A stretch of DNA of 62,770 bases, counting the filler, from Octopus bimaculoides (lineage: Eukaryota), in assembly GCF_001194135.2 (NCBI RefSeq). It is 5 parts of 5 records of this genome, joined end to end, with 100 filler letters (N's around TTAATTAATTAA, not from the genome) between each part and the next. Parts side by side here need not be neighbours in the genome. Positions count along the whole stretch, not along the records: positions 1 to 27,546 come from NW_026297134.1; 4 more parts are not named here. One strand, 5' to 3'. A program made the position numbers and the translations under genes. Within the stretch, counting starts at the first letter, position 1, and each line of letters opens with the position of its first letter. Shown here piece by piece: positions 538-22,124 of this stretch. The notes under the pieces were generated by a model. That model saw nothing but the letters and a program-made list of their open reading frames with translations, was not told where the DNA came from and made no database searches.

Positions 538-1876
538 TGAGGATGGGCTGAAAAGCTCATAGGCTGACTACGATGCAATGAGTGAACTTGACCAAATGTG
601 TTTTATTGTTTGGCATAGTCTCCCCTGCGGTCCATACACTTCTTACATCAGTATTGCAGCACTTGGATTTCCGTGGTATAGAAGCTCTCATCCTGACCCT
701 CAAAAAAGACCTCAACAGCAGATATGGCTTCATCATTGATCCGATACTGCTTCCCAACCAAGTGTTTCCTCATGTTGGGGAACAGAAAATAGTCAGATGG
801 TGCTAAATCAGGAGAATATGGAGGGTGATCAACCAGTTCAAAGCCACAGTCATGCACAGCAGCCATTGCAACCACAGACTTGCGTGCAGGAGCATTGTCC
901 CCGTGAAGCAGGACCCCCTTCATCAGTTTTCCAGGCTGTTTTCATTACATTTCGTAGCTTCCTCAGCAAGGTGGCATATAATATTCACCATTGGTAGTAT
1001 GGCCTTTCTGAATGGGGTCAATGAACACAATGCTGCTTGCATCCTAGAAGATGAAGGCCATCATCTTTGGCCTTCTTTGGTGGGGGGGCGAAGATGGGTG
1101 TTTCTACTGCATGGACTGCTGTTTGGTCTCTGGATCAAAGTCGTGAACTCAGCATTCATCTTGGATGAGGAAAACATACAAGAAAACCGACCGGATTTGC
1201 TTCAAAAAGTGCCAAGTTTGCCTGCGACATGACCAGCTTGGTGTGCTTTTGATCAGGCATCAAAAGTTGTGGCACCCACTGAGCTGAAACCTTCGACATG
1301 CTAGGTTCGNNNNNNNNNNGCATCAAAAGTTGTGGCACCCACTGAGCTGAAACCTTCGACATGCTAGGTTCGTTATGCAGAATGTTCTCAACTCATTCAC
1401 GGGAGATACCTACAGCATTAGTTATCTGATTAACATTTAAATGTCTGCCACTCATTACTGTGTGGTGAACATGGTCAACGTTTTCTTGGGTGGTGGCTGT
1501 AGCAGGACGTCCAAACCTTGGGTCATCTTCAAGACTTTCCCTACCTTTCTTGAATTCAGCTGCCCACATTTCCACAGTTGGTAAAACTGGAGCATCATCT
1601 CCTAATGTAGCAACTGTGTCAGCATGAATGTCTTTGGGGGCTAACCCCTTTTTCTGCAGATATCTGATAACACCACGGTGCCAAATTTTATCCATTTTCA
1701 CAAAATGTCTCTAGTACCACTTTTACAAGTCCTCAATTCTGATTCCAATGTGGGTTTATCTGGAAAGAAAAAAATGGAGTTAGCATCAGTAAAGGTTGAA
1801 TTTAATGCATTCCAAGTTTAATTACTGTATGATAACTCCTTCTTAGTCAGCCTATGATACTTTCAGCCCAGCCTTG
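538..1876 (-). mobile_element. Full-length decayed mariner (Tc1/mariner, D,D34D) DNA transposon, about 1.34 kb
   Basis: TIRs of about 31 bp: 538-568 (tgaggatgggctgaaaagctcataggctgac) versus the reverse complement of 1846-1876. TA dinucleotides flank both ends (536-537, 1877-1878). An interrupted transposase lies inside. Confidence 0.93.
603..1701 (-). pseudogene. Mariner transposase pseudogene (frameshifts and stops)
   Basis: ORF fragments give the N-terminal HTH (..RESLEDDPRFGRPAT), a WVP motif (KVSAQWVPQ), LLHGDNAP and HPPYSPDLAPSDYFLFP, ending ..KCMDRRGDYAKQ*. Confidence 0.92.
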
Positions 1877-2070: not shown

Positions 2071-2213
2071 GTGTCGGTGGTGTCAAGAGAAAAAGGCTAC
2101 TGTCACACTCCAGCCATGTCAACATACTGTTATTTGTCAGAATTGCTGTTCTCAAATGACATTTAAGCAATGCCCCATATGTCAACAATACGTACTCAGC
2201 AAAAGTGGATTTG
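2071..2213 (+). CDS. Internal exon encoding a RING-HC (C3HC4, MIB/IAP-type) finger of an E3 ligase-death domain gene
   Basis: Acceptor ttgttccacAG at 2069-70 and donor GTaag at 2214. The 143 nt translate as CRWCQEKKATVTLQPCQHTVICQNCCSQMTFKQCPICQQYVLSKSGF, spacing C-x2-C-x11-C-x-H-x3-C-x2-C..C-x2-C. The exon ends in phase 1. Confidence 0.9.
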
Positions 2214-3177
2214 GTAAGAACATTCTTTAATGATCTGTCTGTTGTCTCATTAATTTTCTGGTATGGAATAACACACTTCATATTGTGGTAGAGACCCAGA
2301 TCTGCCATTATCTGGCATAAATGGGGTCTTTTCTTTGTAATAGTATATCTATCACTACATCCACTAAACATTGTCTTTATCTAATTAGAAGAGTGATCAC
2401 ACTTCAAAAGGATTGTGCTTTGCAACATATGACTAATGAATGATAATATAAGATAAATGGTAACTAAATGAAATATCACTAAATCTCCAATGTTCTATTT
2501 GTAAACATTTTACTTTCAATTGTGAGTGATTAGAGGTGATTAATGATTTATCAGTATCATGGAGAGCTGATAATTAAAGACAATGTTACTTACAAGAACA
2601 TCAGAGTCAGCTTTGGTAAAGTAGGAGATTCAAGGATAAAATCTGAACTGAGTGTTCAAGGAGCAAGTTTATAGAGTTTGACGGTTAAACCAATCAGCCT
2701 GGGTATCAGAAAAGAATGTTGTAATTGGGAAAGGATGTCAGGGATAGTTTCAACATATTTTACAAAGTTGAACTTCACAAATTCATCATGATTTATCATA
2801 CTGTGAAGATATCAAACAATTACAGTAGTCTAAGGTTTGATAGGAATTGTCATATTTTGTTGGTGGGTATATACACAGAATCTTTCAGTATAAGAATATT
2901 GAACAATAAATTACTTTCATTCAGTACTAAATCAGTATTGAACTGTGAACATGTGTTTAGATTTAAACAAAGTATTGGTGCTAGCATTCGATACAGAGAT
3001 AGAAACAAAACAGGAGTTCCCAGTGTGACTCAAATACACAAATCCCTGTTGATAAATATATACAACCTTGGCCAAATTATAGAGCAGGTATAATAAAATA
3101 GAGAATATGATTGAAACTCATTTACTTAATAATTGAAACCAGTCTAATAAACATTCTACAGTTGATCCCATCATTAA

Positions 3178-4318
3178 TTAGTATTTGATGTGTCCTCCTT
3201 TTGCTTTTATAACTGCTTTTATGCGTTTTTGCATACTTGAGACTAAGTTGGCACAAGTGGCTGGGTCAGTTTCCTGCCACTCTACATGAATTTTGGTTTC
3301 TAATTCGCTTTTTGAAGAACATTTTTGCACCCTCACTGTTCTACCTAAGGGTCACCACATGTTCAATAGGATTGAGGTCTGGAAACTAAGGAGGCCATTT
3401 CATCACCCTCATCCCTTTCTTTACACCAACCCATTGAAACTCTGGATGTGTGGCATGCAGAAATATTTTGTTGAATGATTATGCCATCTGGGGTGTTATC
3501 ATTGAAGATTTTTTGCTAAAGAAGGTTGATAAACTTGATCTAACATGTTGGTGTAAGTGTTGGCATCCATTCTGCCCTTACAAGTGAACAACATTCCAGA
3601 CCCTTAAGAAAACATGCAACCCCAAACAATTACACTTTCCAATCCAAATTTGACTGTTCAGACTGCACATCCAGGATGATAAACCTCCCCTACTCTATGG
3701 TGGACATAGACAGCTCCTGGGTTTTCAAAGATCTGAAGATAATCAAAAAAATTACTGATCATTTTTGGTGTCCAATACAAAATTTGTAAAAGTGTAAGAA
3801 TTTCAATTAATGCCTAGTAAAATGGTGGAAATGAATGTGGAGAACATATATCAAAGTTACTTTGATCAGACCAAACAACTTTAGCCCCATCATCAGTAGT
3901 TCAATCTTCATGCTCTTTTGCCCAACACAATTGCTTCTTCATGTTCCCCTCTGACAGTAACAGGATCTTTTTGGCCTTACGTCCTTTGAATCCAGCTTCT
4001 AATAACCTTCTTCTCAATGTGTGAATTGATATATCTTTGTTTGTTGCCATCCAAAACTCAGCAGCTACGTCAAAAGAGGTGTTTTTCCTATCCACCAGTG
4101 ATGTCCTCTTCAGCAACCTGTCTTCCCTTGTGGTTGTACATGTTTTGCAACCTCGTCCTTTACAATTTATGAAAGACTTTCTCTCATTGTACCTTTTGAT
4201 GGAAATCTTTTCTTGAGCATTTCAATTTTCTTGCAATTTCAACTTGAGAGAATCCTTCACTTGATAATGCAATGATTTGAGACATTTAAGCTTCAGGAAT
4301 CTATTTCTTTGGAGACAT
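3178..4318 (-). mobile_element. Decayed Tc1-like transposase
   Basis: Runs from an ATG at 4318 through an HTH segment (..ISIHTLRRRLLEAGFKGRKAKK..LCWAKEH) to the typical Tc1 C-terminus LVSSMQKRIKAVIKAKGGHIKY* (stop 3178-3180). Many stops; TIRs not resolved. Confidence 0.85.
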
Positions 4319-5354
4319 TTTTAACAAATATTAACGACTGATAAGTTATCAATAAGATATTCAATGAAAAAATAGGAAATAACATTAGTGTCACAAAATG
4401 AATGGCTGAAAATTGACCCAGCAATTTTCACCAACACTAATTAGATGTAATTTATAAAACATTGTAGAGGCATTTTCAATTAGTTGATCTCAATTATCAT
4501 TAGTGACAAAAGTGGTAGAGTAGTTGTGGTGGAGTTGGGGAGTGAGTACTGTTACATATATTCCTTGTAATGTTGTTTTTGTATTAATTACAACTTCAGA
4601 AAAACAGTTTGTGTCAGTCGAACCCTTGTACAGAGGTGTAAATTTTGTGTCCTCAAATTTGTTTGTAACTGGGTTTTCACCCCCATTGCAATGTAGCAGA
4701 TTCATAGAGGGGTCATTAAACGAGTGAGGAAACTTTGATTGATTTTCTAAAAGAAGATTGTGAGAGATATCCTAGATTCTTAAGAAGCAGTTCTTTTGTG
4801 CCTTTTCAGATATTTGCACTACAAATTATATGGATGAACAGTTAAATGTAGTTAATGTGTTTTTTTTATACAAGTGTAGAATGTTTGAGGACACCTGTTA
4901 TCATTTGTCTGTTCCACCTGTGTAGACATGTTGTTTCTTGTGCGGATATATACCCAGAATGTCTCTGGTTAGAATATATATTTTAGATATAAATTAAAAG
5001 TAATATAATATTAAATCTGTTTAAAGATATTGAAATTGAAATTACTTTTGTTAAATTGAGTATTGAACTCTGAACATGTTTACATTTAAACAAAGTATTG
5101 GTATTAACATAAAATATACAGATAGGAATAAAATGTGTTCTAGTGAGATTTGAACATGCAACTTCTTGTTCCTAACTATATGATTAACACTTGTTATAAT
5201 GTTTGCCATCCTTTTCGACCTTTTATACTCACACTTGTTAGTTTTTTAGATGAGATTAATGCTAAAAGAAGCATTGTTTTCTGATTCTTTCACCTTTTGA
5301 TTTTACTTTTGAGTTGATTAGTTTTAATTAGAACATGAATCCTGATCATTGCTC

Positions 5355-6100
5355 CAAGGTGGTATCAGAAAGTTCACGGACTAGTTCTGTAGCATGCCAA
5401 CAGATAGCAGCACATGGTTGCATGTACATTGAGAGTTAACAGTGACTTTCATGAGTCAGTGGGCTGGGTGACACCACTGCGTTTACTTTGCAAGTTGTGA
5501 AATTTGTGCTTTTGTGGTCATGTGTAGGCTGTAGTCTATGATTTTCTCATGGGCAAGACCAAAGAGCCAATGTGGAATTTTGGGTTAAACTTGAGAAGTC
5601 TGCGTCAGAAACATTGAGCATGCTTCAGCAAGATTATGGCAATGGCACAATGAGTTGTATACAATGTTTTGAGTGGCACGCACTTAAAAAAGAGAAGAAT
5701 GCCCCTGGAAGACCTGCCACATGCATCGTCCCCATANNNNNNNNNNGTGGAGCATGAAAAATTGGATTCTTCACCAAGCTCTCCTCATTCATGAAAGTCT
5801 CACAACAAACAACATGGTACCACTTCTGCATCTGCCCCATTTGCCATCTCTTCCCCAAGATGAAAACGTAGTTGAAATGTCACTGTTTTAACCATTGTCA
5901 AGTTCAACAGCAAATTGCTAAAGGTCCTCGCTTCACAGAAAATGGCTTTCAGGACACATTCCAAAAGTGGCATGAATGCTGGGATTGGTGTATTGCTACG
6001 AAAAGTGACCATTTTAAAGGAAATGATGCTAAAATTTGAATAAATAAATAATGTTTTTATTGAACATAATATTTCTGGAAACCTTTTGATAGCACTTTGT
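5355..6100 (+). mobile_element. Internally deleted mariner element
   Basis: Imperfect TIRs (caaggtggtatcagaaagttcacgga versus the reverse complement of the ~6072-6100 end). N-terminal HTH fragment (NVEFWVKLEKSASETLSML..APGRPAT) plus C-terminal remnants (..FQDTFQKWHECWDWCIATKSDHF). Contains a 10-N gap. Confidence 0.75.
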
Positions 6101-7139
6101 GTTTGACGAGAGTAAAGGATTTATTATTAGTATTTGGCAATGGATCTGGTAACATTTTTCTTTCATGGAACTACAGTAATATCAACTGTGCTGAAACACA
6201 ATTATATTCATTGTAACACAGGTCACATGCTTTATTAATTAGATTAATTAGAAGCTATATAGATATCTAGTATTGCAGTGTCAGGCAATGTGCTACTGTA
6301 CTTTCTATATAATCTATTAACATAATAATTAATCTGCTGTCATTCAGAAACACTATTACAGTTGTATGTCTGAAATTTGAACTTACTTTGTCATAGCATC
6401 ATCTTGTACCCTCACCTAACATTTTACACCTTGTTTCCCTGTATGTAAATATATTGTTTTGCTTGGGTGCTGGACCACATCCCTACAAACCGGAATTATT
6501 GTTCCCCATCGTCCAGTAATGTTCAGATGTTATTGTGTTTTGGCTTCATTCCATATGAAAAAGTATGAAGTGAAACATTTCTGTATATTTATATGACACT
6601 AATTTTATATATTATATAAAGTTGGTTAGTGATGTTTTAATTGGTTGGTCTCAATTATCATAAGTGACATGGTGTGATATGGCAATGGAGAGGGTTACGT
6701 GTTCCTTTGTTGCTCTTATAGTAACAATGTCATCAAAATGATAGTTTCTGTCAGCTCTGTAGAGATTTAATGATCATGTTTCCAAATTTTCTAGTAACTG
6801 GGTCTTTGTCCTATAGCTTCCTGTTTGACCCGTGTATACCTAATCATCACTCATCTGGAAAGGAACCTACTTTATTAAAGAGGATGAATGATGTTGAAAT
6901 ATCTTCAAATATTTCCTGAATCAGAAGACATTCTGGTGAACTGTGAAGTCGGCAGTTAGAATTAAAGATTACCAGCAACACCCTCTAACAAAAAGAGCAG
7001 GTGTATGTTTATCCTACTCAAAGTGGCCTGTCGTGTGTCTGAGGACCAACTTGGTTTAACATTGAATTGAGCAGAAAAGAGGTTGAAAGTTGGTTAGTGG
7101 CATCTAGAGGTGAGAGGACGTCATAGGTCATAGGTCGAG

Positions 7140-7835
7140 CACAGATATGAGAAAGAAAACACAAAACTAAGAGAAAAAGAGTGTCATCAAGTGATAATTA
7201 AATGAGATAATTGCAGAATTGTTAGATTATGTAGGAGATATAAATAGGGAGAAGAGATTTAGGAAGGTTAGTCTATTTTGTTGTGGCTCTAAATATTGAG
7301 CTATTAGATTGAGACATTTTAAAAAGTGTTGGCCAAAAGAATAGTGGTCACTAAATGACAATTGATGAGCAGAATGTCTGACAATAACAAAATATAGATC
7401 ATTAATAAAGATTATGAAATTTTACTATAAAATGTAAAACTTGGAAATATTCATTTTAGAGACTAAAGATTGAACAGGAAACTCAGAGGACATCACAGCA
7501 AGTTGGTGAGTATAAAATAACAATACCTAATAGATTTCTGTAAATTTTACCTTCAGCTGAGCTTTATTAGTTGAATGACTAAGAACAGGTTCCATTCCTA
7601 ATTTCCAATTGAAAGATTAGCTGTATAATAATTCTATTAAACATACTGATATTACTGAAGTTTCACAAAATATCCAACATGGTTAGCATGGTTTGTAAAA
7701 TGGATAATTCAGAAGACAAATAGAGTTGATATTGTAGATTGGAACAGAGAACTAAAATAGGCTTTTGTTGTTTAGTGTTAAAAAGTTGAGTTAATGACAA
7801 CGTTTTTGTTTGTTTATATTTGGTTGTTATTGTTG
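7140..7835 (+). repeat. Intron-exon-intron cassette copy 1 (about 700 bp)
   Basis: Clear homology to 12100-12803 and 8270-8750, e.g. tcaagtgataattaaatgagataattgca, atagtggtcac, aaaatataga, ccattcc..caattga, attctatt. Confidence 0.9.
7460..7505 (+). pseudogene. Duplicated exon copy 1 (frame-incompatible pseudo-exon or poison exon)
   Basis: Flanked by tttAG and GTgagt like the exons at 8421 and 12427, with homologous intron flanks. It is 46 nt (RLKIEQETQRTSQQV) and lacks the 2 nt needed for a phase-1 start. Confidence 0.55.
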
Positions 7836-8269
7836 TTGNNNNNNNNNNNNNNNNNNNNNNNNNNNNNNNNNNNNNNNNNNNNNNNNNNNNNNNNNNNNNN
7901 NNNNNNNNNNNNNNNNNNNNNNNNNNNNNNNNNNNNNNNNNNNNNNNNNNNNNNNNNNNNNNNNNNNNNNNNNNNNNNNNNNNNNNNNNNNNNNNNNNNN
8001 NNNNNNNNNNNNNNNNNNNNNNNNNNNNNNNNNNNNNNNNNNNNNNNNNNNNNNNNNNNNNNNNNNNNNNNNNNNNNNNNNNNNNNNNNNNNNNNNNNNN
8101 NNNNNNNNNNNNNNNNNNNNNNNNNNNNNNNNNNNNNNNNNNNNNNNNNNNNNNNNNNNNNNNNNNNNNNNNNNNNNNNNNNNNNNNNNNNNNNNNNNNN
8201 NNNNNNNNNNNNNNNNNNNNNNNNNNNNNNNNNNNNNNNNNNNNNNNNNNNNNNNNNNNNCTTTAACTG

Positions 8270-8750
8270 TAGAAAGTATAAAAATATTAGCCAAAACCAT
8301 AGTGGTCACCAGTTGACCATTGATAATAGGAATGTCTCACAATAATAAAATATAGACTATTAAGAAAGATAAAAAAAAGATTTAACTCTATATTGTAAAA
8401 CTTTTAAATATTTATTTCAGAGAGATTAAATTTGGAGGAAAACCGCTCCCATAGCACATCAAAGAAGTTGGCAGTTGAGCAACAGCAAGTTGGTGAGTAC
8501 AGAATAAGTCCCAAAGTGATTTCAAATTAGTTTTACTTGAGGAGCGTATTTTGTTTGTCTGAGAAGGACTGAGAACAAGTCCCATTCCTAATTTTCAATT
8601 GACAAATCAACTGTATAATAATTCTATTGGTCCACCAAGGTTAGAACAGACTATAGTTAATAATGTCTTTTGGAATAGAGAACTAAAATATGTTATTTGG
8701 TTAGGGGTGAACAAGTGCTTTAATGACAAGGTCTTTGTTTTACATATATA
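8270..8750 (+). repeat. Intron-exon-intron cassette copy 2 (5' part hidden in gap)
   Basis: Shares atagtggtcac, aataataaaatataga, gtaaaactt..aaatatttatttcag, ccattcctaattt.caattga and ctgtataataattctatt with copies 1 and 3. Confidence 0.88.
8421..8492 (+). CDS. 72-nt phase1-1 linker exon of the RING-death domain gene (duplicated cassette copy 2)
   Basis: tttatttcAG|...caagttg|GTgagt. Open frame RLNLEENRSHSTSKKLAVEQQQV is symmetric and in frame with both neighbours. Actual inclusion in the mRNA is unproven. Confidence 0.6.
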
Positions 8751-10439
8751 CTGAGTTTACTAATAAGTTGTTGTTTCAGCAGGAGTCTCTCATAATCTGG
8801 CAGACTTAAGATGAAATGCATTCCAAGTGTCAACATCCTGTCTTTTTGTCACTGATAGGAAATCTATCATTACATCCATTAAACACATTGTATTTTATCG
8901 AAGTAGAAGATACTGGCTTGCTACTGAGATAACCATTGTTTTTTTTTCTTTCTCTTTTTGATAGATACTAGCTGCAACATACAATAAATGACATCGTCCT
9001 CACCCTTTATCATCTGATTTCCATGCTCATGTGGAATGGATGGGTGGTCACTGTCCAAGTCAGTCCTTATTAACAGTTACTGCCCACCTTCATAGGTTGA
9101 GGAACACGTCCCACTAAAACATTCCAGCTTTTCTATGATGGTATGCTCTTCCTAACACCAACCACTTTATAAAGGATCCTTGGTGCATTCTATTGTGGCA
9201 CAAGTACAAGAAAGATTGTTACGTATTATTCAACAAAATTAAACGTTCCTCTCTAACTTATGCAAAGAAATATCAGACATGTTGAAAGAAGAAAGGAGAT
9301 AAATGAATTGGAGAGGAGCTCCTTAAGAGACCTTACGAGGTTACTAGGAAGCTGTTTGCAGATGCTAAGAGCGGCAGGATGAACTGTAATAAATGAAATC
9401 CAGCTTAAGTGTGGTTAGTGGTCAGTAGGGAGAGCTAGAAAAGCTTTTTTAACCATCCCTACTGACCACAATATATATATTTATTTAAAAAGATTATTTT
9501 TTATTTACTAATTAGAAATTTCACTAGTTACAATCTGCTGTATTTTTGGAGCTATTAATCCTGTTCATTCCTGCAGAGGCANNNNNNNNNNNNNNNNNNN
9601 NNNNNNNNNNNNNNNNNNNNNNNNNNNNNNNNNNNNNNNNNNNNNNNNNNNNNNNNNNNNNNNNNNNNNNNNNNNNNNNNNNNNNNNNNNNNNNNNNNNN
9701 NNNNNNNNNNNNNNNNNNNNNNNNNNNNNNNNNNNNNNNNNNNNNNNNNNNNNNNNNNNNNNNNNNNNNNNNNNNNNNNNNNNNNNNNNNNNNNNNNNNN
9801 NNNNNNNNNNNNNNNNNNNNNNNNNNNNNNNNNNNNNNNNNNNNNNNNNNNNNNNNNNNNNNNNNNNNNNNNNNNNNNNNNNNNNNNNNNNNNNNNNNNN
9901 NNNNNNNNNNNNNNNNNNNNNNNNNNNNNNNNNNNNNNNNNNNNNNNNNNNNNNNNNNNNNNNNNNNNNNNNNNNNNNNNNNNNNNNNNNNNNNNNNNNN
10001 NNNNNNNNNNNNNNNNNNNNNNNNNNNNNNNNNNNNNNNNNNNNNNNNNNNNNNNNNNNNNNNNNNNNNNNNNNNNNNNNNNNNNNNNNNNNNNNNNNNN
10101 NNNNNNNNNNNNNNNNNNNNNNNNNNNNNNNNNNNNNNNNNNNNNNNNNNNNNNNNNNNNNNNNNNNNNNNNNNNNNNNNNNNNNNNNNNNNNNNNNNNN
10201 NNNNNNNNNNNNNNNNNNNNNNNNNNNNNNNNNNNNNNNNNNNNNNNNNNNNNNNNNNNNTAATTGAAGAGTTCCTAATTAACATTCATTTTTAATCACT
10301 TTTCAAAACCCTCATTACTACACTATTTTGCTGTCCAATTGAATCATCTCTTCCAATCATATCAAGTAAAACCTTCAGCTTTTCTGTATATTTTAGTGAG
10401 ACTTCAGTTAGCTTTTAGTGATACTGATTGTTTGGTGTT

Positions 10440-10680
10440 TTAGAACATGACCTTTAAGCCAAGTATTGAGAAGAAGACTCATCAAGCCAAGTAAAATCGC
10501 AGTCATGGCAGATACTGGTGGCATGTAAAAACACCCATTGCACTCTGGGAATGGTTGGCATTAGGAAAGGCATCCAGCCATAGGAATCATGCGAAATCAG
10601 ACTGGAGTCTGGTGCATCCTTCCATTCAAACCGTCCAACCCATCCCAGTATGAACAACAGACGTTAAGTGATGATGATGA
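10440..10680 (+). mobile_element. RTE-LINE 3' tail or derived non-autonomous repeat
   Basis: tggttggcattaggaaaggcatccag..gtccaacccat..gacgttaagtgatgatgatga, the same tail as 17150-17310 and 33800-33962. Confidence 0.8.
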
Positions 10681-10829
10681 ACTGGAGGGGCATATACAAG
10701 AGATCTACACTGATCCTAAGTGAGATAATCCATTCCCACTCATGGACAGTCTGAAATGCCCAACAAAACTATGAATGAAATCTCAACTTGGTGGTTTCAA
10801 ACAGAAACAATTATATAACTGAGTGAAGA

Positions 10830-11880
10830 AGGCAAACGCAAAGAGGTGCCCCAGGAGGTGATGGTGTATCATAGAAAGTGTACAGGTATTAGTGTACACA
10901 ATTATGTTATGAAGCTGTACTTAAAGAGTTGTGGCATAAAGATGAAATGGTTGATGACTAGTAGAAGGCAGAAAAAAATTACTTCCCAAAGAAAGCTGAA
11001 ACAGAACTGATTGACCAGTTCAGACCATTTTCAATCTTGAATGTAGATGGCAAAATTTACAAGGGTGTAGTTGCCAAGAGATCAGCTACACATCTATAAA
11101 ATAATGACTATGAGACCGAGAGTGTCCAAGATGCTGGAATTTCCAGAACCACTGGATGCGTAGAACATGATCTTTCAATCTGCAAGACACAAAGAAGAAT
11201 AAAAGGGATTTGAATGTTGTATGACCTGATCTGGTTGATGCTTATGGTTCTGTACCACACAAATTAGTGATGGAACCAATGAACTTCTTTTATATATGAG
11301 AGCAGATTAAAGATCTGACTAGAAGCTGCTTTAATAATTTCAAAATGTGGTTCCTGACAGAAAATTTTACAACAGACTGACATCATTTTGAAATTGGAAT
11401 TGCTGTAGGTTGCACAATATCAATCATTTAGTTTGTGCTTGTTGTGGAGATGTTACTTAGATCAGCAGATTGATCAGAAGAAATGGCTCGAGTGAAATCA
11501 CCCAAGAAGGAATCCAAAGAATGATATAACAATACTAACAAGAGACGAAAAGGGTATGCAAATAGTTCTAGATGAACTGGATTAACTAATTCTTTCGTCA
11601 AGAATGGGGTTTAAACAAAATAATTAATGCAGTCATTTGTCAAAAGGTCAGCTGAAGCAAGTGGAGTTCAAAATAGCAAATGAAACGATGCCAAGGGTTA
11701 AAGAGAAACCTATAAAATGTTTTGGACGATGGTATGCTACCTCGTTGTGCAGTAAGGGTAGAGGCGTAGAGGTCATGGCACAAACTGAAGATGGGTTAAA
11801 GGCAATAGCTAAGCCAACATTTCCTGGCAAATAAAAGACTTGATGCTTCCAGTTTGATCTATATCCCTGCCTTGCTTATA
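10830..11880 (+). mobile_element. Decayed RT fragment of an R2-superclade (HERO-like) non-LTR retrotransposon
   Basis: Degenerate motifs FRPFSILNVDGKIY, VQDAGI..GCVEH, DLNVV..DL.DAYGSVPHKLV, LEIGIAVGCTIS, and the post-RT segment MPRVKEKPIKCFGRWY..TEDGLKAI..FPGK. Confidence 0.7.
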
Positions 11881-12099
11881 AAATTCTTGAGTATCGGTTT
11901 TTATGCAACATTTCAGATTTTTTTTTACTGCCATAATGTATGGATGAACAATTATATCTAGTTAATAAGATTTTGTGAAAGCATACTGTGTTTTTGGATA
12001 CCTGATATGTTTTGCTCCCCCTCTCTAGAATTAATCATTGCCCACCCGGAAAGAAATCTGCTTCATTAAGGAGCCTTCTAATATCTCAAACACATGTGG

Positions 12100-12803
12100 C
12101 ACATATATAAGAAACAAAAAGTACAAAACTAAAAGAAAAACAGTGTTATCAAGTGATAATTAAATGAGATAATTGCAACATCGTTAGATTATTTAAGGTG
12201 TCTTAATAGAGAAAGGAAATTTAGGAAAGTTAGTCTGTTTTGTTGCAGACCTAAGTATTGAGCTATTACCTGGTCCCACTGGATAAAGCATAAGAATATT
12301 GACCAAACACATAGTGGTCACCTGATGACCAGCAATGATGATAGGTATGTCCCACTATAATAAAATATAGATTCTTAATGAAGAATTTTTACTCTCAGGT
12401 ATAAAACTTGCAAATATTTATTTCAGAAACTCCAAAGTTAGAGAAGTTACTCCAAGCTGTCGCACAACTGTTAGGAAGCAAGTGGAAGCAAGTTGGTGAG
12501 TATAAAATAACAGTACTTAATTGATTTTAATAGGTGTCAGCTTTTGTTTGTCAGCATGACTGAGAGAAGATCCCATTCCAACTTTGCAATTGAAAGGCTA
12601 GCTGTAAAGTGATTCTATTAAATGTATTGGTATTACTGAAACTTCATAAAATAACCACCGAGATTAGCAGGGTTAGTAAAATGGATAAATTAGAGGACAC
12701 AATAGATTTAATATTGTCTTTTGAGAGAGCAAATTAAAATATGTCATTTTAACTAAAAATTGGTTAGTTAATGACCAATTTGTTTTGTTTGTTTTACATT
12801 TTT
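12100..12803 (+). repeat. Intron-exon-intron cassette copy 3
   Basis: Homologous along its length to 7140-7835. Confidence 0.9.
12427..12495 (+). CDS. 69-nt exon encoding the start of the death domain (cassette copy 3)
   Basis: tttatttcAG|...caagttg|GTgagt. Encodes TPKLEKLLQAVAQLLGSKWKQV, which joins the last exon to give the death-domain motif LGSKWKQVGRHLG. Confidence 0.88.
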
Positions 12804-13449
12804 NNNNNNNNNNNNNNNNNNNNNNNNNNNNNNNNNNNNNNNNNNNNNNNNNNNNNNNNNNNNNNNNNNNNNNNNNNNNNNNNNNNNNNNNNNNNNNNNN
12901 NNNNNNNNNNNNNNNNNNNNNNNNNNNNNNNNNNNNNNNNNNNNNNNNNNNNNNNNNNNNNNNNNNNNNNNNNNNNNNNNNNNNNNNNNNNNNNNNNNNN
13001 NNNNNNNNNNNNNNNNNNNNNNNNNNNNNNNNNNNNNNNNNNNNNNNNNNNNNNNNNNNNNNNNNNNNNNNNNNNNNNNNNNNNNNNNNNNNNNNNNNNN
13101 NNNNNNNNNNNNNNNNNNNNNNNNNNNNNNNNNNNNNNNNNNNNNNNNNNNNNNNNNNNNNNNNNNNNNNNNNNNNNNNNNNNNNNNNNNNNNNNNNNNN
13201 NNNNNNNNNNNNNNNNNNNNNNNNNNNNNNNNNNNNNNNNNNNNNNNNNNNNNNNNNNNNNNNNNNNNNNNNNNNNNNNNNNNNNNNNNNNNNNNNNNNN
13301 NNNNNNNNNNNNNNNNNNNNNNNNNNNNNNNNNNNNNNNNNNNNNNNNNNNNNNNNNNNNNNNNNNNNNNNNNNNNNNNNNNNNNNNNNNNNNNNNNNNN
13401 NNNNNNNNNNNNNNNNNNNNNNNNNNNNNNNNNNNNNNNNNNNNNNNNN

Positions 13450-13932: not shown

Positions 13933-15237
13933 TTGGGTCATCCCATAAATAATGCAGTTTTTTCAATTGTATGAACAGAAAGTCAGAGGGGGACGGGATA
14001 AACTACCTGCATCAACTTGCTATAAAGGCAGGTAGTAATTTTACAATTTACTTATTCTTAGTGCAAGTTCTGAAGTGTGCAGTTCAATTTTAATAGTTAC
14101 TTTTTCAAAGCTATAATGGAAGTTACAAAGGAGAATATTTTGCTTTATGAATTCAGTAAAGGCAACAATGCAACAGAAAGCATGAGGAATATTAATGCAG
14201 TGTCTTGGGATCAGAAACTAAGCGTAAGCCAGTGTCAATGGTGGTTTCATAAATTCCGAGCCAGAAACTACAGCCTAGAAGATGAGCCTCGTCCTGGAAG
14301 ATCTGTAGAGCTCAACGAGGACGTCCTGCAAACGCTGGTGGAACACAATCCCATTGTAACTAGCAGAGAAGCTTGGATTTGGTCATTCAACCATTCATTG
14401 ATACTTGCATGGTATTGGAAAAATCATCAAATTGGGTCAATGGATCACGCACAGAGTGAATGTGTGCTCTCCTCTGCTGTCATGTCTCATGAATGAACCT
14501 CTTTTGAACCGAATAGTGACTGGTGACAAGAAACGGGTTCTCTATAAATACGTCAAGCACCAAAGACAGTGGGTAGGGAGAGGGGAAACACTGGCACTCC
14601 AGCCTAAAGAAGGTCCTCAGACATGTAAGGTGTTGTTATCTGTTTGGTGGGATATGAAAGATTTAGTCCACTTTGAACTTTTAAACCCTAACNNNNNNNN
14701 NNTGTTTGGTGGGATATGAAAGATTTAGTCCACTTTGAACTTTTAAACCCTAACCAAACGATAACAAAGGAGATCTATTGGAAGCAGCTTGAGTGGCTTA
14801 AGTCAGTGCTAGAAGAGAAACGAACATATTTGGTTCCAAGATAATAAGTGCTTTTCCATCAGGATAATGCTCGGACACATACAGTAAGGATGACATTCCA
14901 AAGGCTGGAGCAGTTTGAATGGGAAACGATGCCCACCCACCATATTCACCAGCCATTGCCCCATCTAATTGTCATTTATTCTGCAGTCTTCAAACTCGTT
15001 CGGACAGAGAAAATATGTTATCAGTGGATGAGGTCAGAATAGAAGTGGAGGGGGTATTTTTCATCATGGACAAGTGAATTTTGGAAGAGAGGCCTTGCAA
15101 GTCTGCCGGATAGATGGAAGAGCATTGTAGAAAATGAATGAAGTATATTAAAGATTTAAAAAGAAGTTTGTTTCTCTTAAGTTTGTAAAATAAAAGAAGT
15201 GTAAACAAACTGCATTATTTATGGGATAATAACCCAA
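13933..15237 (+). mobile_element. Full-length decayed mariner element (about 1.3 kb)
   Basis: TIRs ttgggtcatcccataaataatgcagttt and aaactgcattatttatgggataataacccaa with TA on both sides (13931-32, 15238-39). Transposase remnants MEVTKE..YEFSKGNNATE, EPRPGR, IVTGDKKRVLY, FHQDNARTH, from about 14116 to 15140. Confidence 0.93.
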
Positions 15238-15489
15238 TACATTGTGTCTTTGAGATCATTCTGGTATCTCGTCTATTTGTATTTTGGTCCAGATATGCCT
15301 AATAGGACCAGTATTGTTTGATAGTTCAAACCATATCTTCTAGATATTTCTAACTCTTGATGTTTTAATTATCAATTAGTCAAAAGGGGAGAAACATCAC
15401 AGACAACTATTTCAGGCATTGACCATGGAATGTTATCAAACGGACAAAATGGGATTTCTTTAAAGGGTCTCTGGGGTAATGATACTAAA

Positions 15490-17310
15490 TAGGATGTATA
15501 GGGCTCTCCCGATCCCTTATCTGGTGATCAATGAGGAAACTAGGGATAGAAGAATGTTTAGTGAAAGCTGTGTGAGCCATGTACAGAGACGCTGTCAGTA
15601 AGGTGAGGGTCGGCAACGAGTNNNNNNNNNNGTACAGAGACGCTGTCAGTAAGGTGAGGGTCGGCAACGAGTACAGTGAAGAATTCCGGTTAGAGGTAGG
15701 GGTCCACCAAGGTTCAGTCCTCAGCCCTAACCCTATTTATCATAGTCTTCCAGGCTATAACAGAGGAATGCCCCTGGGAGCTCCTCTATGCTGATGACCT
15801 TGCACTAATCGCTGAGTCACTATCAGCACTAGAGGAGAAGCTTCAGGTGTGGAAGCAAGGACTAGAATCGAAGGGCTTTAGAGTCAACCTAGCAAAAATC
15901 AAAGTCCTAATAAGTAGGAAGTCAGACAAACTACAAATCCCTTCAGTTAGATGGGTCTGCTCAATCTGTAGAAAAGGCGTAGGTAGAAACTCTATAAGAT
16001 GTACCCAGTGTAAGCAATGGACACATAAGAGGTGCAGCAATACAAAAGGAAAGTTAACTAGGAAGTTAGTTTTTGTATGTGGCAGATGTTCAGGAGCAAT
16101 AAACACTGAAAATGTGCAGAAAACAACTTCTGCCACATTCCAGGGAGAAAAACTAGATGTAGTTGATAGCTTCCGCTATGTAGGTAACCAAGTTAGTAGT
16201 GGGGAGGGTATGATGAAATTGTAGCTGCTAGAATAAGAATAGCCTGGGCAAAATTCAGAGAGCTCTTACCTGTGTTGGTGACAAAGGGCCTCTCACTCAG
16301 AGTAAAAGGCAAACTGTACGACGCATGAGGACATGCGTGACTGCTGAGGACATGCGTAAGCTCACGAGGAATGATGCCAGTATGCTCCGATGGATGTGCA
16401 AACTCGACAGAGTGTAAGTACCTTGAGAGTAAAGTTGAACCTTAGAAGCATCAGTTGTAGTGTGCAAGAGAGACGATTGTGCTGGTATGGTCATGTGGCG
16501 AGAATGGATGAGGATAGCTGTGTGAAAAAGTGCCAAGCCCTAGCGGTTGAGGGAACCCGTGGAAGAGGTAGACCCAGTAAGACCTGGGATGAGGTGGTGA
16601 AGCACGACCTTCGAACATTAGGCCTCACTGAGGCAATGACTTGTGACCGAGACCTTTGGAAATATGCTGTGCGTGAGAAGACCCGGCAAGCCAAGTGAGA
16701 CCTTAATCCGAGGCCTCTGCCAGGAGTATAGCCAGCACACTTATGCGTACCTTTCCTTCATTGGACACTAAACTCTTCTTGCAAAGACCTGTTGAGGCAA
16801 GTGAAATCGAAATCGAACTAAATTTGATGACTGGCATTCATGCCAACGTCTCCTTCATTGGACACTAAACTCGTCTTGCGAAGACCTGTTGGGGCAAGTG
16901 AAAGCGAAGTCATGACGACACCTGTACCAGTGGAGCGCTAAGAGCACCATCTGAGCGTGATCGTTACCAGAACCGTCTTCCTGGCACTTGTGCCGGCACC
17001 ATGTGAAAAGACATTCGAGCGAGATCGTTGCCAGTGCCGCTGGACTGGCTTCTGTGCAGGTGACACGTAAGATATACCTTTTTGAGCGTGGTCGTTGCCA
17101 GTACCGCCTGACTGGCCTCCGTGCCGGTGGCCCGTAAAAGCATCCACTACAGTCTCAGAGTGGTTGGTATTAGGAAGGGCATCCAGCCGTAGAAACTCTT
17201 ACAAATCAGATTGGAGCCTGGTGTAGCCTTCTGGTTCACCAGTTCTCAATCAAATCGTCCAACCCATGCTAGCATGGAAAGCGGACATTAAGCGATAGTG
17301 ATGACGACAA
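15490..17310 (+). mobile_element. 5'-truncated RTE-clade LINE (RT C-terminal half, PHD finger, 3' UTR), in the last intron of the RING-DD gene
   Basis: VGVHQGSVLSP, LLYADDL, GFRVNLAKIKV, C4HC3 finger, ERRLCWYGHVARM..GTRGRGRPSKTW, stop at 16698, then a GC-rich 3' UTR ending in a degenerate (gat)n tail. Confidence 0.92.
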
Positions 17311-17925: not shown

Positions 17926-18131
17926 GTAGGCATTTAGGAATCAAAAATGTCCAACTGGAAACAATCAGGTTAGACAATCCTCTTAACACTAACGAACATA
18001 GCTTCCAGATGCTGTACAAATGGTACACAAGTTGTGATCAAGAGAAACGAACACTGAAAACACTGAGAGAAGCCCTCGAAGCAGCTGAGTGCTTTGAGGC
18101 ACTTCAATGTCTACCATCAGAAGAAAAGTGA
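17926..18131 (+). CDS. Terminal coding exon encoding the rest of the death domain
   Basis: Polypyrimidine tract and ttttgcAG at 17924-25. Encodes GRHLGIKNVQLETIRLDNPLNTNEHSFQMLYKWYTSCDQEKRTLKTLREALEAAECFEALQCLPSEEK*, with the death-domain pattern (..ML..W....T...L..AL). Confidence 0.9.
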
Positions 18132-18805: not shown

Positions 18806-19184
18806 ACTTTATGATTGCATATATAAAAAATAAATCCATAAATTTCAAATTTATTAATAGAGGTGTTGATAAATCCTTTCCTAATAAAATGATGTCATAT
18901 TTGTGATTTTAATTTCAATGTGATTGTGGGAAAGACAGTGACTCTCACCTTCCAAATAATTTGTTATTAGATTCGTTCATGACAAGAGAGAACAAAACTG
19001 GTTGAGCTGAAATTAAATACAAAAGTATTTCAGTTACATCAAATTCATTTCAGAAATTGATCAACAATTACTATGAAAATTTATTAGAATTCAAACAAAT
19101 TATTTGGTATCAAAGTTTGTATAAAATTATTTTAAGTAAATTGCTAACACATCTTACTGATTTTTAGCTCCAAAATGTGGGAGT

Positions 19185-20020
19185 CAACAACTTCCGGCGG
19201 TGTATATTTCGCGTGTCACTGTTATTTATGACATATTACACTTTGGTCAGTGGAGGCACAATGACCTAGTGGTTAGGGCAGTGGCTTCGCGGTCATAGAA
19301 AAGCGGTTTCGATTCCCAAACCGGGCGTTGTGAGTGTTTATTGAGCGAAAACACCTGCAACTCCACGAGGCTCCGGCAGGGGATGGATGGCAACCCTGCT
19401 GTACTCTTTCACCACAACTTTCTCTCACTCTTACTTCCTGTTTCTGTTGTGCCTGTAATTCAAAGGGTCAGCCTTGTCACACTGTGTCACGTTGAATATC
19501 CCCCGAGAACTACGTTAAGGGTACACGTGTCTGTGGTGTGCTCAGCCACTTGCACGTTGATTTCACGAGCAGGCTGTACCGTTGATCGGATCAACTGGAA
19601 CCCTCGGCGGAGTGCTAACAATAACAAACCTTTGGCCGGCAGATTAAAAAAATAATTGTCACTGTTATTTATGACATATTTCATCTCAGTTACGTTTGTA
19701 TGAATAAACGATTGTACTTGAAGCATATTTACTTCATGTCACCACCACAATCGTTCGTGCATTTCTACTACTTTTAGTCTTTTTTTTCATGCTTTTCAGC
19801 TATTTTCGGAAAGACATTTTTGCCCCCCACTCCCCTTCTAATTTCTTCATTTTTTCACATTTTTCCGTAACTCTAACACGAAAATCCCAACCCTAACTCT
19901 AAAACCCTAACCCTGATCCTAGAACCCTAACCCTAAAACCTGAAAGCTAAAACCAGTACAAACGCACGAACGATGTCATAAATAACTGACAAACGAAATA
20001 TACACCGCAAGAAGTTGTTG
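19185..20020. mobile_element. Non-autonomous TIR (foldback/MITE-like) element with internal telomere-like repeats
   Basis: 19185-19233 (caacaacttccggcggtgtatatttcgcgtgtcactgttatttatgaca) is the near reverse complement of 19974-20020. Degenerate (ccctaa)n at about 19887-19936. Confidence 0.7.
19238..19656 (+). mobile_element. tRNA-derived SINE flanked by a 24-bp direct repeat
   Basis: Pol III A-box (tgacctagtgg) and B-box (ggtttcgattccc) near 19262-19317. Identical tgtcactgttatttatgacatatt at 19214-19237 and 19657-19680. Confidence 0.8.
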
Positions 20021-21960: not shown

Positions 21961-22124
21961 TTTTAAAATTGAGTGTGTGTGTGCGTGTGTATGTGCGTGA
22001 ATGCGTGTGTGTGTGTGTGCTTGGAACATGTCCATGTTTATATTGTGTAAATTCAAACACGACTCTACAAGCCACAACATTAAAAATTAAAGACAGAGAC
22101 GGACAGAAAAGGGGAAAATGTCCC

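What the first reader, a model, noticed from the sequence alone, without database searches (positions are those of the whole stretch)
7140..12803. Triplicated intron-exon-intron cassette whose exons diverged faster than the flanking introns
Seen: three copies of a ~700-bp cassette, each with a small exon ending caagttg|GTgagt. Hundreds of bases of intron flank align easily by eye, but the peptides are barely similar: RLKIEQETQRTSQQV, RLNLEENRSHSTSKKLAVEQQQV and TPKLEKLLQAVAQLLGSKWKQV (death-domain helices 1-2). Inference: duplicates of the first death-domain exon were repurposed as charged linker or cassette exons. Faster change in exon than intron suggests positive selection or exon-specific remodelling, and alternative inclusion could tune RING-to-DD spacing.
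Basis: partly seen in the sequence, partly recalled or inferred. Interest (0 to 1): 0.75.

Follow-up and report, generated by a model that had tools for sequence, protein, structure and literature searches.

The report
Duplicated death-domain exon cassettes, octopus gene
An octopus ankyrin-RING-death-domain gene carries three tandem copies of the intron-exon-intron unit holding its first death-domain exon: one is still that exon, one is probably an optional 24-residue spacer exon, and one is frame-broken. This is an ordinary tandem exon duplication, except that the exons have diverged more than their introns.

Summary
Three ~700-bp units lie at 7129-7838, 8261-~8790 and 12091-12803. Each has a small exon ending CAAGTTG|GTGAGT. 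Flanks are 66-79% identical. The exons are only 48-53% identical for c2-c3 and c1-c3 (Fisher p=4e-4 and 0.003); c1-c2 shows no significant difference.

The window is an Octopus bimaculoides scaffold carrying LOC106870258, a member of an Ank-RING-death-domain family that I found only in three Octopus species. A gapless O. vulgaris locus is collinear with it, so the array is not an assembly artefact.

- c3 (12427-12495, 69 nt, phase 1-1) encodes death-domain helix 1.
- c2 (8421-8492, 72 nt, phase 1-1) is open in both species. Its O. sinensis counterpart is present in some RefSeq isoforms and absent from others.
- c1 (7460-7505) is 46 nt. In the RING frame it reads ...SKSGFETKD-stop. RefSeq includes it only by reading the RING exon out of frame.

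Positive selection is not shown: c2 dN/dS is about 1 and c3 is 9N:1S on tiny counts. The exon excess is nevertheless real. It recurs in O. vulgaris 51-nt mini-exon arrays (pi 0.11 against 0.03) and in death-domain exon 2, and its cause is unresolved. No transcript data for this locus could be examined.

The parts
2071..2213 (+). RING (zf-C3HC4_3) exon. The acceptor ag is at 2069-2070 and the donor is G|GTAAGA. It leaves in phase 1, which sets the frame for every downstream cassette.
   Evidence: Sequence. Pfam zf-C3HC4_3 E=2.7e-9. The exon is 92-95% identical to the RING exons of O. vulgaris loci L001 and L004. The closest solved chains are the cIAP1/2 RINGs.
7129..7838 (+). Cassette unit 1 (c1) with its intron flanks. 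It ends at an assembly gap.
   Evidence: The flanks are 74-79% identical to units 2 and 3. It sits at the syntenic position of the first mini-exon unit of O. vulgaris L001 and L004, at 77-78% identity.
7460..7505 (+). c1 exon, 46 nt, with intact splice sites. It breaks the frame after the RING exon (…SKSGFETKD-stop), so it is a pseudo-exon or a premature-stop exon.
   Evidence: Relative to the 72-nt exons it lacks about 21-24 nt in the 3' half and 2 nt (one AG of AGAG) at the 5' end.
7839..8260 (.). Assembly gap in the intron between c1 and c2. It hides the head of unit 2 (about 175 nt) and possibly one or two further short units.
   Evidence: O. vulgaris has four extra 165-bp mini-exon units at the homologous place.
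8261..8790 (+). Cassette unit 2 (c2) with its intron flanks. Its 5' head is lost in the gap.
   Evidence: It is 87-88% identical (BLAST) to O. vulgaris L001 15289-15848.
8421..8492 (+). c2 exon, 72 nt, phase 1-1, open (ERLNLEENRSHSTSKKLAVEQQQV). It is the probable optional 24-residue spacer exon.
   Evidence: The O. vulgaris counterpart has the same length, the same splice sites and 67/72 identical bases. The O. sinensis counterpart is included in isoforms X2, X4/5, X8, X10, X16 and X17, and skipped in X6 and X13.
9582..10260 (.). Assembly gap inside the c2-c3 intron. No cassette copy is expected here.
   Evidence: The window is collinear with L001 on both sides of the gap. L001 has 480 bp there, with no match to any cassette query.
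12091..12803 (+). Cassette unit 3 (c3) with its intron flanks. It ends at a gap at the same unit position as unit 1.
   Evidence: It is 90% identical to L001 18852-19562 and 92% identical to the O. bimaculoides paralogue L002.
12427..12495 (+). c3 exon, 69 nt, phase 1-1. This is the genuine first death-domain exon (ETPKLEKLLQAVAQLLGSKWKQV, helix 1).
   Evidence: The Pfam Death match starts inside it. In the AlphaFold model of the O. sinensis isoform, helix 264-284 starts in the counterpart of this exon, with pLDDT 77-93 across the domain. It is present in all ten O. sinensis isoforms examined.
17926..18131 (+). Second and last death-domain exon (helices 2-6), including the stop codon at 18129-18131.
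1705..1778 (+). First coding exon of RefSeq model XP_014771760.1. It lies next to, and partly overlaps, an antisense ORF that looks like a mariner transposase remnant, and it has no homologue in O. vulgaris. It is probably spurious. The model's second exon (2168-2213) uses an acceptor inside the RING exon and reads it out of frame.
   Evidence: The six exons 1705-1778, 2168-2213, 7460-7505, 8421-8492, 12427-12495 and 17926-18131 reproduce P0009 exactly. Homology with L001 starts only at 1842.

Best explanation
**What it is.** The region is a tandem exon-duplication array in the intron between the RING exon and the death-domain (DD) exons of an Octopus bimaculoides Ank-RING-DD gene. That gene is LOC106870258, one of a family that RefSeq labels 'MIB2-like'. 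An intron-exon-intron unit of about 0.7-1 kb containing the first DD exon was duplicated before O. bimaculoides and O. vulgaris split.

**How it works.** The RING exon ends in phase 1, and the cassette exons that are multiples of three are phase 1-1. They share almost identical splice sites (TATTTATTTCAG|...|GTGAGTATAAAATAAC). Any subset can therefore be spliced in without changing the frame.

**The three copies here.**
- c3 remains the first DD exon (helix 1). It was present in every isoform I examined, so it appears constitutive.
- c2 is an optional polar 24-residue spacer.
- c1 has lost 2 nt at its 5' end and about 24 nt internally. It now breaks the frame, so it is either dead or, if spliced, ends the protein just after the RING.

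**Shown.**
- The array, its phases and frames.
- Its conservation and collinearity in O. vulgaris.
- The excess divergence of the exons over their flanks.
- Annotation of the orthologous exons as alternatively included coding exons in O. sinensis, and of analogous modules in O. bimaculoides paralogues.

**Inferred.**
- That c2 is actually spliced in this locus.
- That linker length matters for function.
- The cause of the faster exon divergence. My best guess is early relaxation or remodelling of duplicated exons, together with mosaic exchange among paralogues, rather than proven adaptive change.
For: **Copies and flank identity.**

**Exon coordinates and frames.**. RING+c2+c3+DD and RING+c3+DD are open; RING+c1 reads ETKD-stop.

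**Domains.** One search gives Death E=1e-10 and zf-C3HC4_3 E=2.7e-9. One search shows the closest solved chains.

**Collinearity.** The gapless O. vulgaris locus L001 is collinear with every contig of the scaffold. It carries a c2 orthologue (72 nt, 67/72 identical, open), a c3 orthologue, and five 51-nt phase 1-1 open mini-exons.

**Isoforms.** O. sinensis LOC115225502 isoforms differ only in which of these exons they contain. A second O. sinensis gene keeps a c2-type exon (P0022).

**Family.** The Ank-RING-[0-6 modules]-DD architecture recurs in proteins from O. bimaculoides, O. sinensis and O. vulgaris. O. bimaculoides paralogues have isoforms differing by one module.

**Survival of c2.** A rough estimate puts the chance of c2 surviving neutral decay with its frame, open reading frame and splice sites intact at about 0.03-0.1. 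One search computed P(no frameshifting indel) ~0.45 and P(open) ~0.24. The splice-site factor of ~0.3 is my own rough addition.

**Birth and death of copies.** One copy in L002 has lost its donor GT. One L004 unit is 49 nt and is left out of the annotated protein.
Against: - No RNA evidence for this locus could be examined.
- RefSeq 'X' isoforms are computational models, and I could not see their transcript support.
- c2 shows no purifying selection between species (dN/dS ~0.96; exon identity 0.93, equal to its flanks). It could be a neutral relic here.
- The O. vulgaris annotation of L001 (P0003) skips all cassettes, including the c3 counterpart.
- The RefSeq model for this very locus includes c1, which is awkward if c1 is simply dead.
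- Orthology between the window and L001 is approximate. The family is mosaic: the RING exon is closer to L004, and the 3' half is closer to the O. bimaculoides paralogue L002.
Confidence: 0.72

Rival explanations
1. c1 and c2 are both unused, neutrally decaying pseudo-exons in O. bimaculoides. Only c3 is spliced, and the RefSeq model that strings all three together is a prediction artefact.
For: - c1 breaks the frame.
- c2 has dN/dS ~0.96 and diverges at the intron rate between species.
- Other copies in the family are visibly decaying: one has lost its donor in L002, and one is 49 nt in L004.
- The RefSeq model needs an out-of-frame RING exon and a transposon-derived first exon.
- Bulk intron shows no extra conservation near the cassette exons.
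Against: - c2 has kept its length, open frame and both splice sites in two species. The rough neutral expectation for that is 0.03-0.1 (plus my own splice-site factor).
- Its counterpart is annotated as alternatively included in O. sinensis, and a c2-type exon is kept in a second O. sinensis gene.
- Neutral decay cannot by itself make exons diverge faster than introns.
Confidence: 0.2
2. The exon-over-intron excess reflects diversifying (positive) selection on the linker and helix-1 peptides. On this view the array is a device for generating isoform diversity in an immune or cell-death-type adaptor family.
For: **Exons diverge more than flanks.**
- Among cassette types in the window: 0.48-0.53 against 0.66-0.79.
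- Among ten O. vulgaris mini-units: 14 of 51 exon columns vary against 8 of 95 intron columns (p=0.003), and pi is 0.11 against 0.029. Ten of the 14 variable exon columns are at codon positions 1 or 2.
- In DD exon 2: 0.85 against 0.91 for window-L001, and 0.913 against 0.93-0.96 for window-L002.

**Other support.**
- c3 shows 9N:1S between species.
- Combinatorial isoforms are annotated.
Against: - DD exon 2 has dN/dS of 0.3-0.5 and c2 about 1.
- Among the mini-exons, about one third of the roughly 12 third-position columns vary (4 columns, my estimate) against 8% of intron columns. That points to a process acting on the whole exon rather than on the protein.
- All counts are small, and the copies are not independent.
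Confidence: 0.15
3. The exon-flank discordance comes from mosaic history. Ectopic gene conversion or unequal crossing-over among cassettes and among paralogous genes would give exons and flanks different ages.
For: - The family is visibly mosaic. The window's RING exon is closest to L004 (95%), its middle is collinear with L001, and its 3' half is closest to L002 (93% against 89%).
- The L001 and L004 mini-exon units are 96-99% identical, although their DD exons are about 60-70% identical.
- Unit 1 is only 77% identical to its syntenic O. vulgaris counterpart, whereas neighbouring intron is 88-92% identical.
- The c1 exon interior resembles c2, but its downstream flank resembles the mini-exon type.
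Against: - Since the species split, flanks group by cassette type and not by species (c2-c2 0.88-0.93 against c2-c3 0.66-0.77). Recent conversion among c1, c2 and c3 is therefore excluded.
- No conversion tract boundaries were mapped.
Confidence: 0.3
4. c1 is a regulated premature-stop ('poison') exon. Its inclusion would give an Ank-RING protein without a death domain, or an NMD target, so that splicing switches the DD on or off.
For: - c1 keeps a pyrimidine-rich acceptor and the family's consensus donor.
- It introduces a stop four codons after the RING exon.
- RefSeq chains it into the transcript model.
Against: - The syntenic O. vulgaris exon is a 51-nt in-frame mini-exon, so the stop is not conserved.
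- The 46-nt length is explained simply by a 2-nt slippage plus a deletion.
- There are no expression data.
Confidence: 0.12
5. The triplication is an assembly artefact, for example mis-scaffolded paralogous or haplotype contigs joined across N gaps.
For: - Every unit touches a gap.
- Units 1 and 3 break at the same unit position.
- Three 10-N gaps elsewhere in the scaffold are flanked by exactly duplicated 41-53 nt, which shows imperfect contig joining.
Against: - The copies are only about 75-79% identical, far too divergent for haplotypes.
- A gapless O. vulgaris chromosome assembly has the same units in the same order and orientation.
- The paralogous loci L002 and L004 also carry multiple units.
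Confidence: 0.02

Closest known systems
Tandem exon duplication giving alternatively spliced homologous exons (surveyed for human genes in PMC8373072; origin of mutually exclusive exon arrays discussed in PMC6071210)
   Same: Adjacent exons of similar length and identical phase sit inside duplicated intron-exon-intron units, and they are used alternatively in annotated isoforms.
   Different: The classic outcome is mutually exclusive substitution of one homologous exon for another. Here the copies are additive. c2 and the mini-exons are added in front of c3, which is always kept. The duplicates have lost death-domain helix-1 character: the conserved Trp is gone in c2 and in the mini-exons.
Arrays of short, differentially spliced repeat exons that set linker or spring length, such as the titin PEVK exons (from my own knowledge; not checked here)
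   Same: Many small symmetric exons encode a low-complexity, charged segment, and variable inclusion changes the distance between folded domains.
   Different: This array is far smaller (1-7 exons). It arose from a domain-encoding exon, lies between a RING and a death domain, and has no functional data.
Vertebrate MIB2 / Mind bomb E3 ligases (the name RefSeq gives to family members)
   Same: Ankyrin repeats are followed by a C-terminal zf-C3HC4_3 RING of the IAP/MIB type.
   Different: In the 349-aa O. sinensis isoform, Pfam found only Ank, RING and Death. No MIB/HERC2, ZZ or Mib-repeat domain appeared, there is only one RING, and a C-terminal death domain is present that MIB2 lacks. The octopus proteins resemble MIB2 only in the Ank-RING part.
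Gene families in which exons evolve faster than introns, such as conotoxins and snake-venom PLA2 (from my own knowledge; not checked here)
   Same: Nucleotide divergence is higher in coding exons than in the adjacent introns.
   Different: In those families the excess is clearly nonsynonymous (omega well above 1). Here dN/dS is 0.3-1 for most segments, and synonymous positions also look fast, so selection is not established.

Membership tests
Tandem exon duplication | Neighbouring exons and their flanks are homologous. | tested here: met
   The three units have 66-79% identical flanks, and the exons can be aligned end to end.
Tandem exon duplication | The duplicated exons have the same splice phase and similar length. 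| tested here: met
   c2 is 72 nt and c3 is 69 nt, both phase 1-1 after a phase-1 RING exon. c1, at 46 nt, is the exception.
Mutually exclusive exons | Exactly one exon of the array appears in each mature mRNA. | tested here: not met
   O. sinensis isoforms contain c2 together with c3, or c3 alone, plus 1-4 mini-exons. This was tested only on annotation of the sister species.
Cassette (skippable) coding exon - c2 | The length is a multiple of 3, the frame is open, and the splice sites are intact. | tested here: met
   c2 is 72 nt and open. It has a TTTCAG acceptor and a GTGAGT donor in both O. bimaculoides and O. vulgaris.
Cassette (skippable) coding exon - c2 | Both inclusion and skipping are seen in transcripts of this locus. 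| not testable with these tools
   Only RefSeq models were available. The O. bimaculoides model includes c2. O. sinensis models include it in X2, X4/5, X8, X10, X16 and X17, and skip it in X6 and X13.
Cassette (skippable) coding exon - c1 | The length is a multiple of 3 and the exon is open in the gene's frame. | tested here: not met
   c1 is 46 nt, and the RING frame reads ETKD-stop. No alternative acceptor restores the frame (and my own reading of the sequence).
Death domain (PF00531) | The profile match passes the curated threshold and covers helix 1 through helix 6. | tested here: met
   The match scores 42 bits against a cut-off of 22.6 and covers profile positions 3-79 of 86, starting inside c3. 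The AlphaFold model of the O. sinensis isoform gives pLDDT 77-93 for the domain.
RING zf-C3HC4_3 (PF13920) | The profile match passes the curated threshold. | tested here: met
   The match scores 37.1 bits against a cut-off of 27. The closest solved chains are the cIAP1/2 RINGs.
MIB2 orthologue | MIB/HERC2, ZZ and Mib-repeat domains are present, with two C-terminal RINGs. | tested here: not met
   Pfam on the 349-aa O. sinensis isoform finds only Ank, one RING and Death. The 5' part of the gene is not on this scaffold, so the window itself cannot be tested.
Positively selected exon | dN/dS is significantly above 1. | tested here: inconclusive
   c3 gives 9N:1S (about 2.6), c2 gives 4N:1S (about 0.96), and DD exon 2 gives 0.3-0.5. 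The counts are too small for a test.
Poison (premature-stop) exon - c1 | Inclusion introduces a premature stop, and inclusion is regulated or coupled to NMD. | tested here: inconclusive
   The premature stop is shown. Inclusion and NMD coupling cannot be tested here.

The most novel reading that the evidence does not exclude
The RING-to-DD interval of this Octopus-restricted Ank-RING-DD family may be a fast-evolving, combinatorially spliced exon array. On this reading the helix-1-derived modules are kept diverse by selection: the exons are about four times as variable as their introns in the O. vulgaris mini-exon arrays. A single gene would then produce many adaptor isoforms, in the manner of a small-scale diversity generator for a cell-death or innate-immune E3 ligase. 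Frame-broken copies such as c1 would act as switches that remove the death domain.
Probability: 0.1. Interest if true: 0.7.

Novelty: new member of a known kind. Interest (0 to 1): 0.4.

Why it matters
- **Evolution of linkers.** This is a clean, datable example of how duplication of a domain-encoding exon yields new linker exons and isoform diversity. It occurs in a family that I found only in three Octopus species, in which a ubiquitin-ligase RING is joined to a death domain.
- **Annotation error.** It flags a concrete RefSeq problem. XP_014771760 reads the RING exon out of frame so as to accommodate a 46-nt exon, and therefore loses the RING that its relatives have.
- **An open evolutionary question.** The repeated finding that exons (cassettes, mini-exons and DD exon 2) diverge faster than neighbouring introns is unusual. 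It is worth a proper test for selection against gene conversion once more octopod genomes and transcriptomes can be used.

Tried and rejected
1. **RNA structure.** I tested whether exon-intron pairing or an editing-type duplex could explain the conserved flanks. Folding c3 +/-150 nt gave z=+1.9, and c2 +/-150 nt gave z=-1.95. There is no consistent structure.
2. **Intron constraint.** Substitution identity between O. bimaculoides and O. vulgaris is about 0.92 all along the introns, with no rise near the cassette exons. Constrained flanks therefore do not explain the pattern since the species split.
3. **Polarising c2-c3 differences with outgroups.** This gave mostly ambiguous columns (15 of 26 exon differences). 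The excess could not be assigned to one lineage.
4. **Assigning c1 to the c2, c3 or mini-exon type from its exon.** Short gapped alignments fit several types equally well. Only its synteny and downstream flank place it with the first mini-exon position.
5. **Fetching the O. sinensis locus.** This failed because only the longest isoform of a gene is indexed. I used the O. vulgaris locus instead.
6. **Pfam on the reverse-transcriptase-like stretch 10990-11760.** No hit was found.
7. **AlphaFold of isoform X5.** The linker has pLDDT 24-39. The Ank and RING parts are also low with this shallow alignment, so the result says little about disorder.
8. **Literature.** Searches found nothing on this octopus family.
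9. **A weak alternative phase-0 donor inside the RING exon (TAC|GTACTC at 2191/2192).** I considered it from the sequence as a way to rescue c1. I rejected it because the site is poor and absent from O. vulgaris.

Full report
**1. What the sequence shows**

The region holds three copies of one unit:

| Unit | Span | Exon | Exon length |
|---|---|---|---|
| 1 (c1) | 7129-7838 | 7460-7505 | 46 nt |
| 2 (c2) | 8261-~8790 | 8421-8492 | 72 nt |
| 3 (c3) | 12091-12803 | 12427-12495 | 69 nt |

Each unit has a (T)TTYAG acceptor, a short exon and the identical donor CAAGTTG|GTGAGTA.

The gaps flagged by the scan's program (7839-8260 and 9582-10260), and a third at 12804-13449, all lie in introns. No exon or reading frame crosses a gap.

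**2. What gene this is**

- An exon at 2071-2213 encodes a zf-C3HC4_3 RING (Pfam E=2.7e-9).
- c3 plus an exon at 17926-18131 encode a death domain. The Pfam Death match has E=1e-10 and starts inside c3.
- The closest solved chains are the cIAP1/2 RINGs and the ankyrin, RIPK1 and TNFR1 death domains.
- A protein search identifies the window as the 27,546-bp Octopus bimaculoides scaffold carrying LOC106870258 (P0001/P0009).
- The ankyrin exons seen in relatives are not on this scaffold.

**3. Phases and frames**

The RING exon ends in phase 1.

- c2 (72 nt) and c3 (69 nt) are phase 1-1 and open.
- RING+c3+DD and RING+c2+c3+DD both give uninterrupted RING-DD proteins.
- c1 (46 nt) gives ...SKSGFETKD-stop.

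The RefSeq protein XP_014771760.1 is reproduced exactly by exons 1705-1778, 2168-2213, 7460-7505, 8421-8492, 12427-12495 and 17926-18131. It accommodates c1 only by two devices. It starts in an exon next to a transposon remnant, and it enters the RING exon through an internal acceptor in the wrong frame. The model therefore has no RING, unlike every relative.

**4. Is the array real?**

The gapless O. vulgaris chromosome locus L001 is collinear with every contig of the scaffold, from the RING exon to DD exon 2. This validates the order and orientation across the N gaps.

L001 carries the following:
- a c3 counterpart (19184-19255, 72 nt);
- a c2 counterpart (15441-15512, 72 nt, 67/72 identical, open, same splice sites);
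- at the syntenic position of c1, five tandem 165-bp units. Each has a 51-nt phase 1-1 open mini-exon of the form VCPK[FC]EEKAV[QK]TV[AV]ES[VF].

L001 has no cassette at the places homologous to gaps 9582-10260 and 12804-13449. Gap 7839-8260 corresponds to where the extra mini-exon units sit, so one or two copies may be hidden there.

Other loci show different states:
- The O. bimaculoides paralogue L002 has c3 plus a decayed copy whose donor GT is lost.
- The distant paralogue L003 has one cassette only and serves as an outgroup.
- The O. vulgaris paralogue L004 has five mini-exons. One is 49 nt and is omitted from the annotated protein.

Cassette-like sequence was found only between the RING and DD exons in all five loci. 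It is therefore not a dispersed repeat.

**5. Exon against flank divergence**

Results from a multiple alignment of nine cassettes:

| Pair | Exon identity | Flank identity | Fisher p |
|---|---|---|---|
| c2-c3 (window) | 0.48 | 0.77 / 0.66 | 4e-4 |
| c1-c3 (window) | 0.53 | 0.77 / 0.74 | 0.003 |
| c1-c2 (window) | 0.70 | 0.75 / 0.73 | not significant |
| c2-c3 (O. vulgaris) | 0.53 | 0.79 / 0.69 | 2e-4 |

For c2-c3 and c1-c3, no 72-column flank window was as diverged as the exon. The O. vulgaris result reflects the same ancient divergence, so it is not an independent confirmation.

Since the species split the picture is different:
- the c2 exon is 0.93 identical, the same as its flanks;
- the c3 exon is 0.86 against 0.92-0.93 (p=0.07);
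- bulk intron is about 0.92 everywhere, with no extra conservation near the exons.

The pattern recurs elsewhere:
- Among ten O. vulgaris mini-units, 14 of 51 exon columns vary against 8 of 95 intron columns (p=0.003), and pi is 0.11 against 0.029.
- DD exon 2 is 0.850 identical between the window and L001, against 0.912 and 0.906 for its flanks. Against L002 it is 0.913, with flanks at 0.963 and 0.927.

**6. Is it positive selection?**

This is not shown.
- dN/dS is 0.3-0.5 for DD exon 2.
- It is about 0.96 for c2 (4N:1S).
- It is about 2.6 for c3, but from 9N:1S only.
- Among the mini-exons, third-position columns also vary more than intron columns. That suggests a process acting on the whole exon.

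The family is mosaic:
- The window's RING exon is closest to L004.
- Its 3' half is closest to L002.
- Unit 1 is only 77% identical to its syntenic O. vulgaris counterpart, although neighbouring intron is 88-92% identical.
- The L001 and L004 mini-units are 96-99% identical despite very different death domains.

Exchange among cassettes and paralogues is therefore a serious alternative. However, flanks group by cassette type rather than by species, which excludes recent conversion among c1, c2 and c3. RNA folding gave no consistent structure. I leave the cause open.

**7. Are the duplicates used?**

I had no direct transcript data for this locus. The indirect evidence is as follows.

- O. sinensis LOC115225502 is the counterpart of L001. 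Its RefSeq isoforms X2, X4/5, X6, X8, X10, X13, X16 and X17 differ only in which cassettes they contain. They carry 1-4 mini-exons. The c2 counterpart is present in X2, X4/5, X8, X10, X16 and X17, and absent in X6 and X13. c3 is always present.
- A second O. sinensis gene keeps a c2-type exon (P0022).
- An exhaustive profile search shows a family of Ank-RING-[0-6 modules of ~17-26 aa, motif xPKxE(E/D)KxVQTxAE]-DD proteins. Every member whose source I looked up is from O. bimaculoides, O. sinensis or O. vulgaris.
- O. bimaculoides paralogues have RefSeq isoforms that differ by exactly one module: 563, 545 and 528 aa in one gene, and 424 and 407 aa in another.
- The modules resemble the N-terminal half of the helix-1 exon, which fits an origin by duplication and truncation of that exon.
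- A rough estimate puts the chance that c2 stayed intact under pure decay at about 0.03-0.1. One search computed the indel and open-frame terms; the splice-site factor is my own.
- An AlphaFold model of isoform X5 gives a confident death domain whose first helix starts in the c3 counterpart. The linker has low confidence, but so do the Ank and RING parts, so that result is weak.

**8. Verdict**

The finding is a genuine tandem exon-duplication array.
- c3 is the working first death-domain exon.
- c2 is most likely an optional spacer exon.
- c1 is a frame-broken copy that the RefSeq model accommodates incorrectly.

The claim that exons diverged faster than introns is confirmed, but its attribution to positive selection is unproven. 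This is a new member of a known kind, namely tandem exon duplication feeding alternative splicing. It has one unusual and unexplained feature: exon-focused divergence.

Noticed in passing
window 1257-1372, 14641-14754, 15581-15672: Three of the five 10-N gaps (1310-1319, 14693-14702, 15622-15631) are flanked by exactly duplicated sequence of 53, 52 and 41 nt. These look like overlapping contig ends that were never merged, which makes them artificial duplications from the assembly.
   Followed up: yes
window 1705-1778 and 2168-2213: RefSeq XP_014771760 (.1 and .2) starts in an exon that sits beside an antisense transposon remnant. It then reads the RING exon out of frame from an internal acceptor. 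The annotated protein therefore lacks the RING that all its relatives have.
   Followed up: yes
window 15505-17217 and 22127-23785: Two copies of a retroelement lie in inverted orientation and bracket the last death-domain exon (17926-18131). The arms are 76-93% complementary over about 1.7 kb, and the longest is 308 nt at 87%. An ORF in the left copy has a sub-threshold RVT_1 match and a PHD finger.
   Followed up: partly
window 7838/7839 and 12803/12804: Units 1 and 3 both run into assembly gaps at the same position of the repeat unit, just after a T-rich stretch (tttgtttgttt...). O. vulgaris has ordinary sequence at that point, so the cause is probably a low-complexity or coverage problem in the Illumina assembly.
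   Followed up: partly
window 14074-15074 (+); also 651-941, 1396-1710, 3181-3351, 3904-4221 (-): These are mariner/Tc1-type transposase remnants. HTH_48 and Transposase_1 were confirmed for 14074-14716, and 651-941 gave only a weak, sub-threshold DDE_3 match. The rest were judged by eye. About 2.9 kb (2296-5153) and 1.5 kb (5594-7133) of the RING-to-c1 intron are absent from O. vulgaris L001.
   Followed up: partly
window 8940-9260: A stretch downstream of c2 recurs at 77% identity in the paralogue L002 (12752-13072), inserted in the head of its decayed cassette. Short matches also occur elsewhere in L001-L003. It is probably a dispersed SINE-like repeat.
   Followed up: no
L001 14307-15019 and L004 8014-8726: The O. 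vulgaris 165-bp mini-exon units contain CPxC in some copies (VCPRCREK, VCPKCEEK) but CPKF or CPKS in others. The variable second cysteine sits at one of the most variable exon columns.
   Followed up: no
window 2071-2213; L001 and L004 RING exons: The +1 frame of the RING exon is open across the whole exon, and gene predictors have used it twice independently. One case is the O. bimaculoides model. The other is an internal segment of the fused O. vulgaris model P0006 (...GVGGVKRKRLL...SNAPYVDNTYSGKVDL).
   Followed up: no
window 20790-20958, 21967-22024, 24929-25004: (CA)n/(TG)n-type microsatellite tracts.
   Followed up: no
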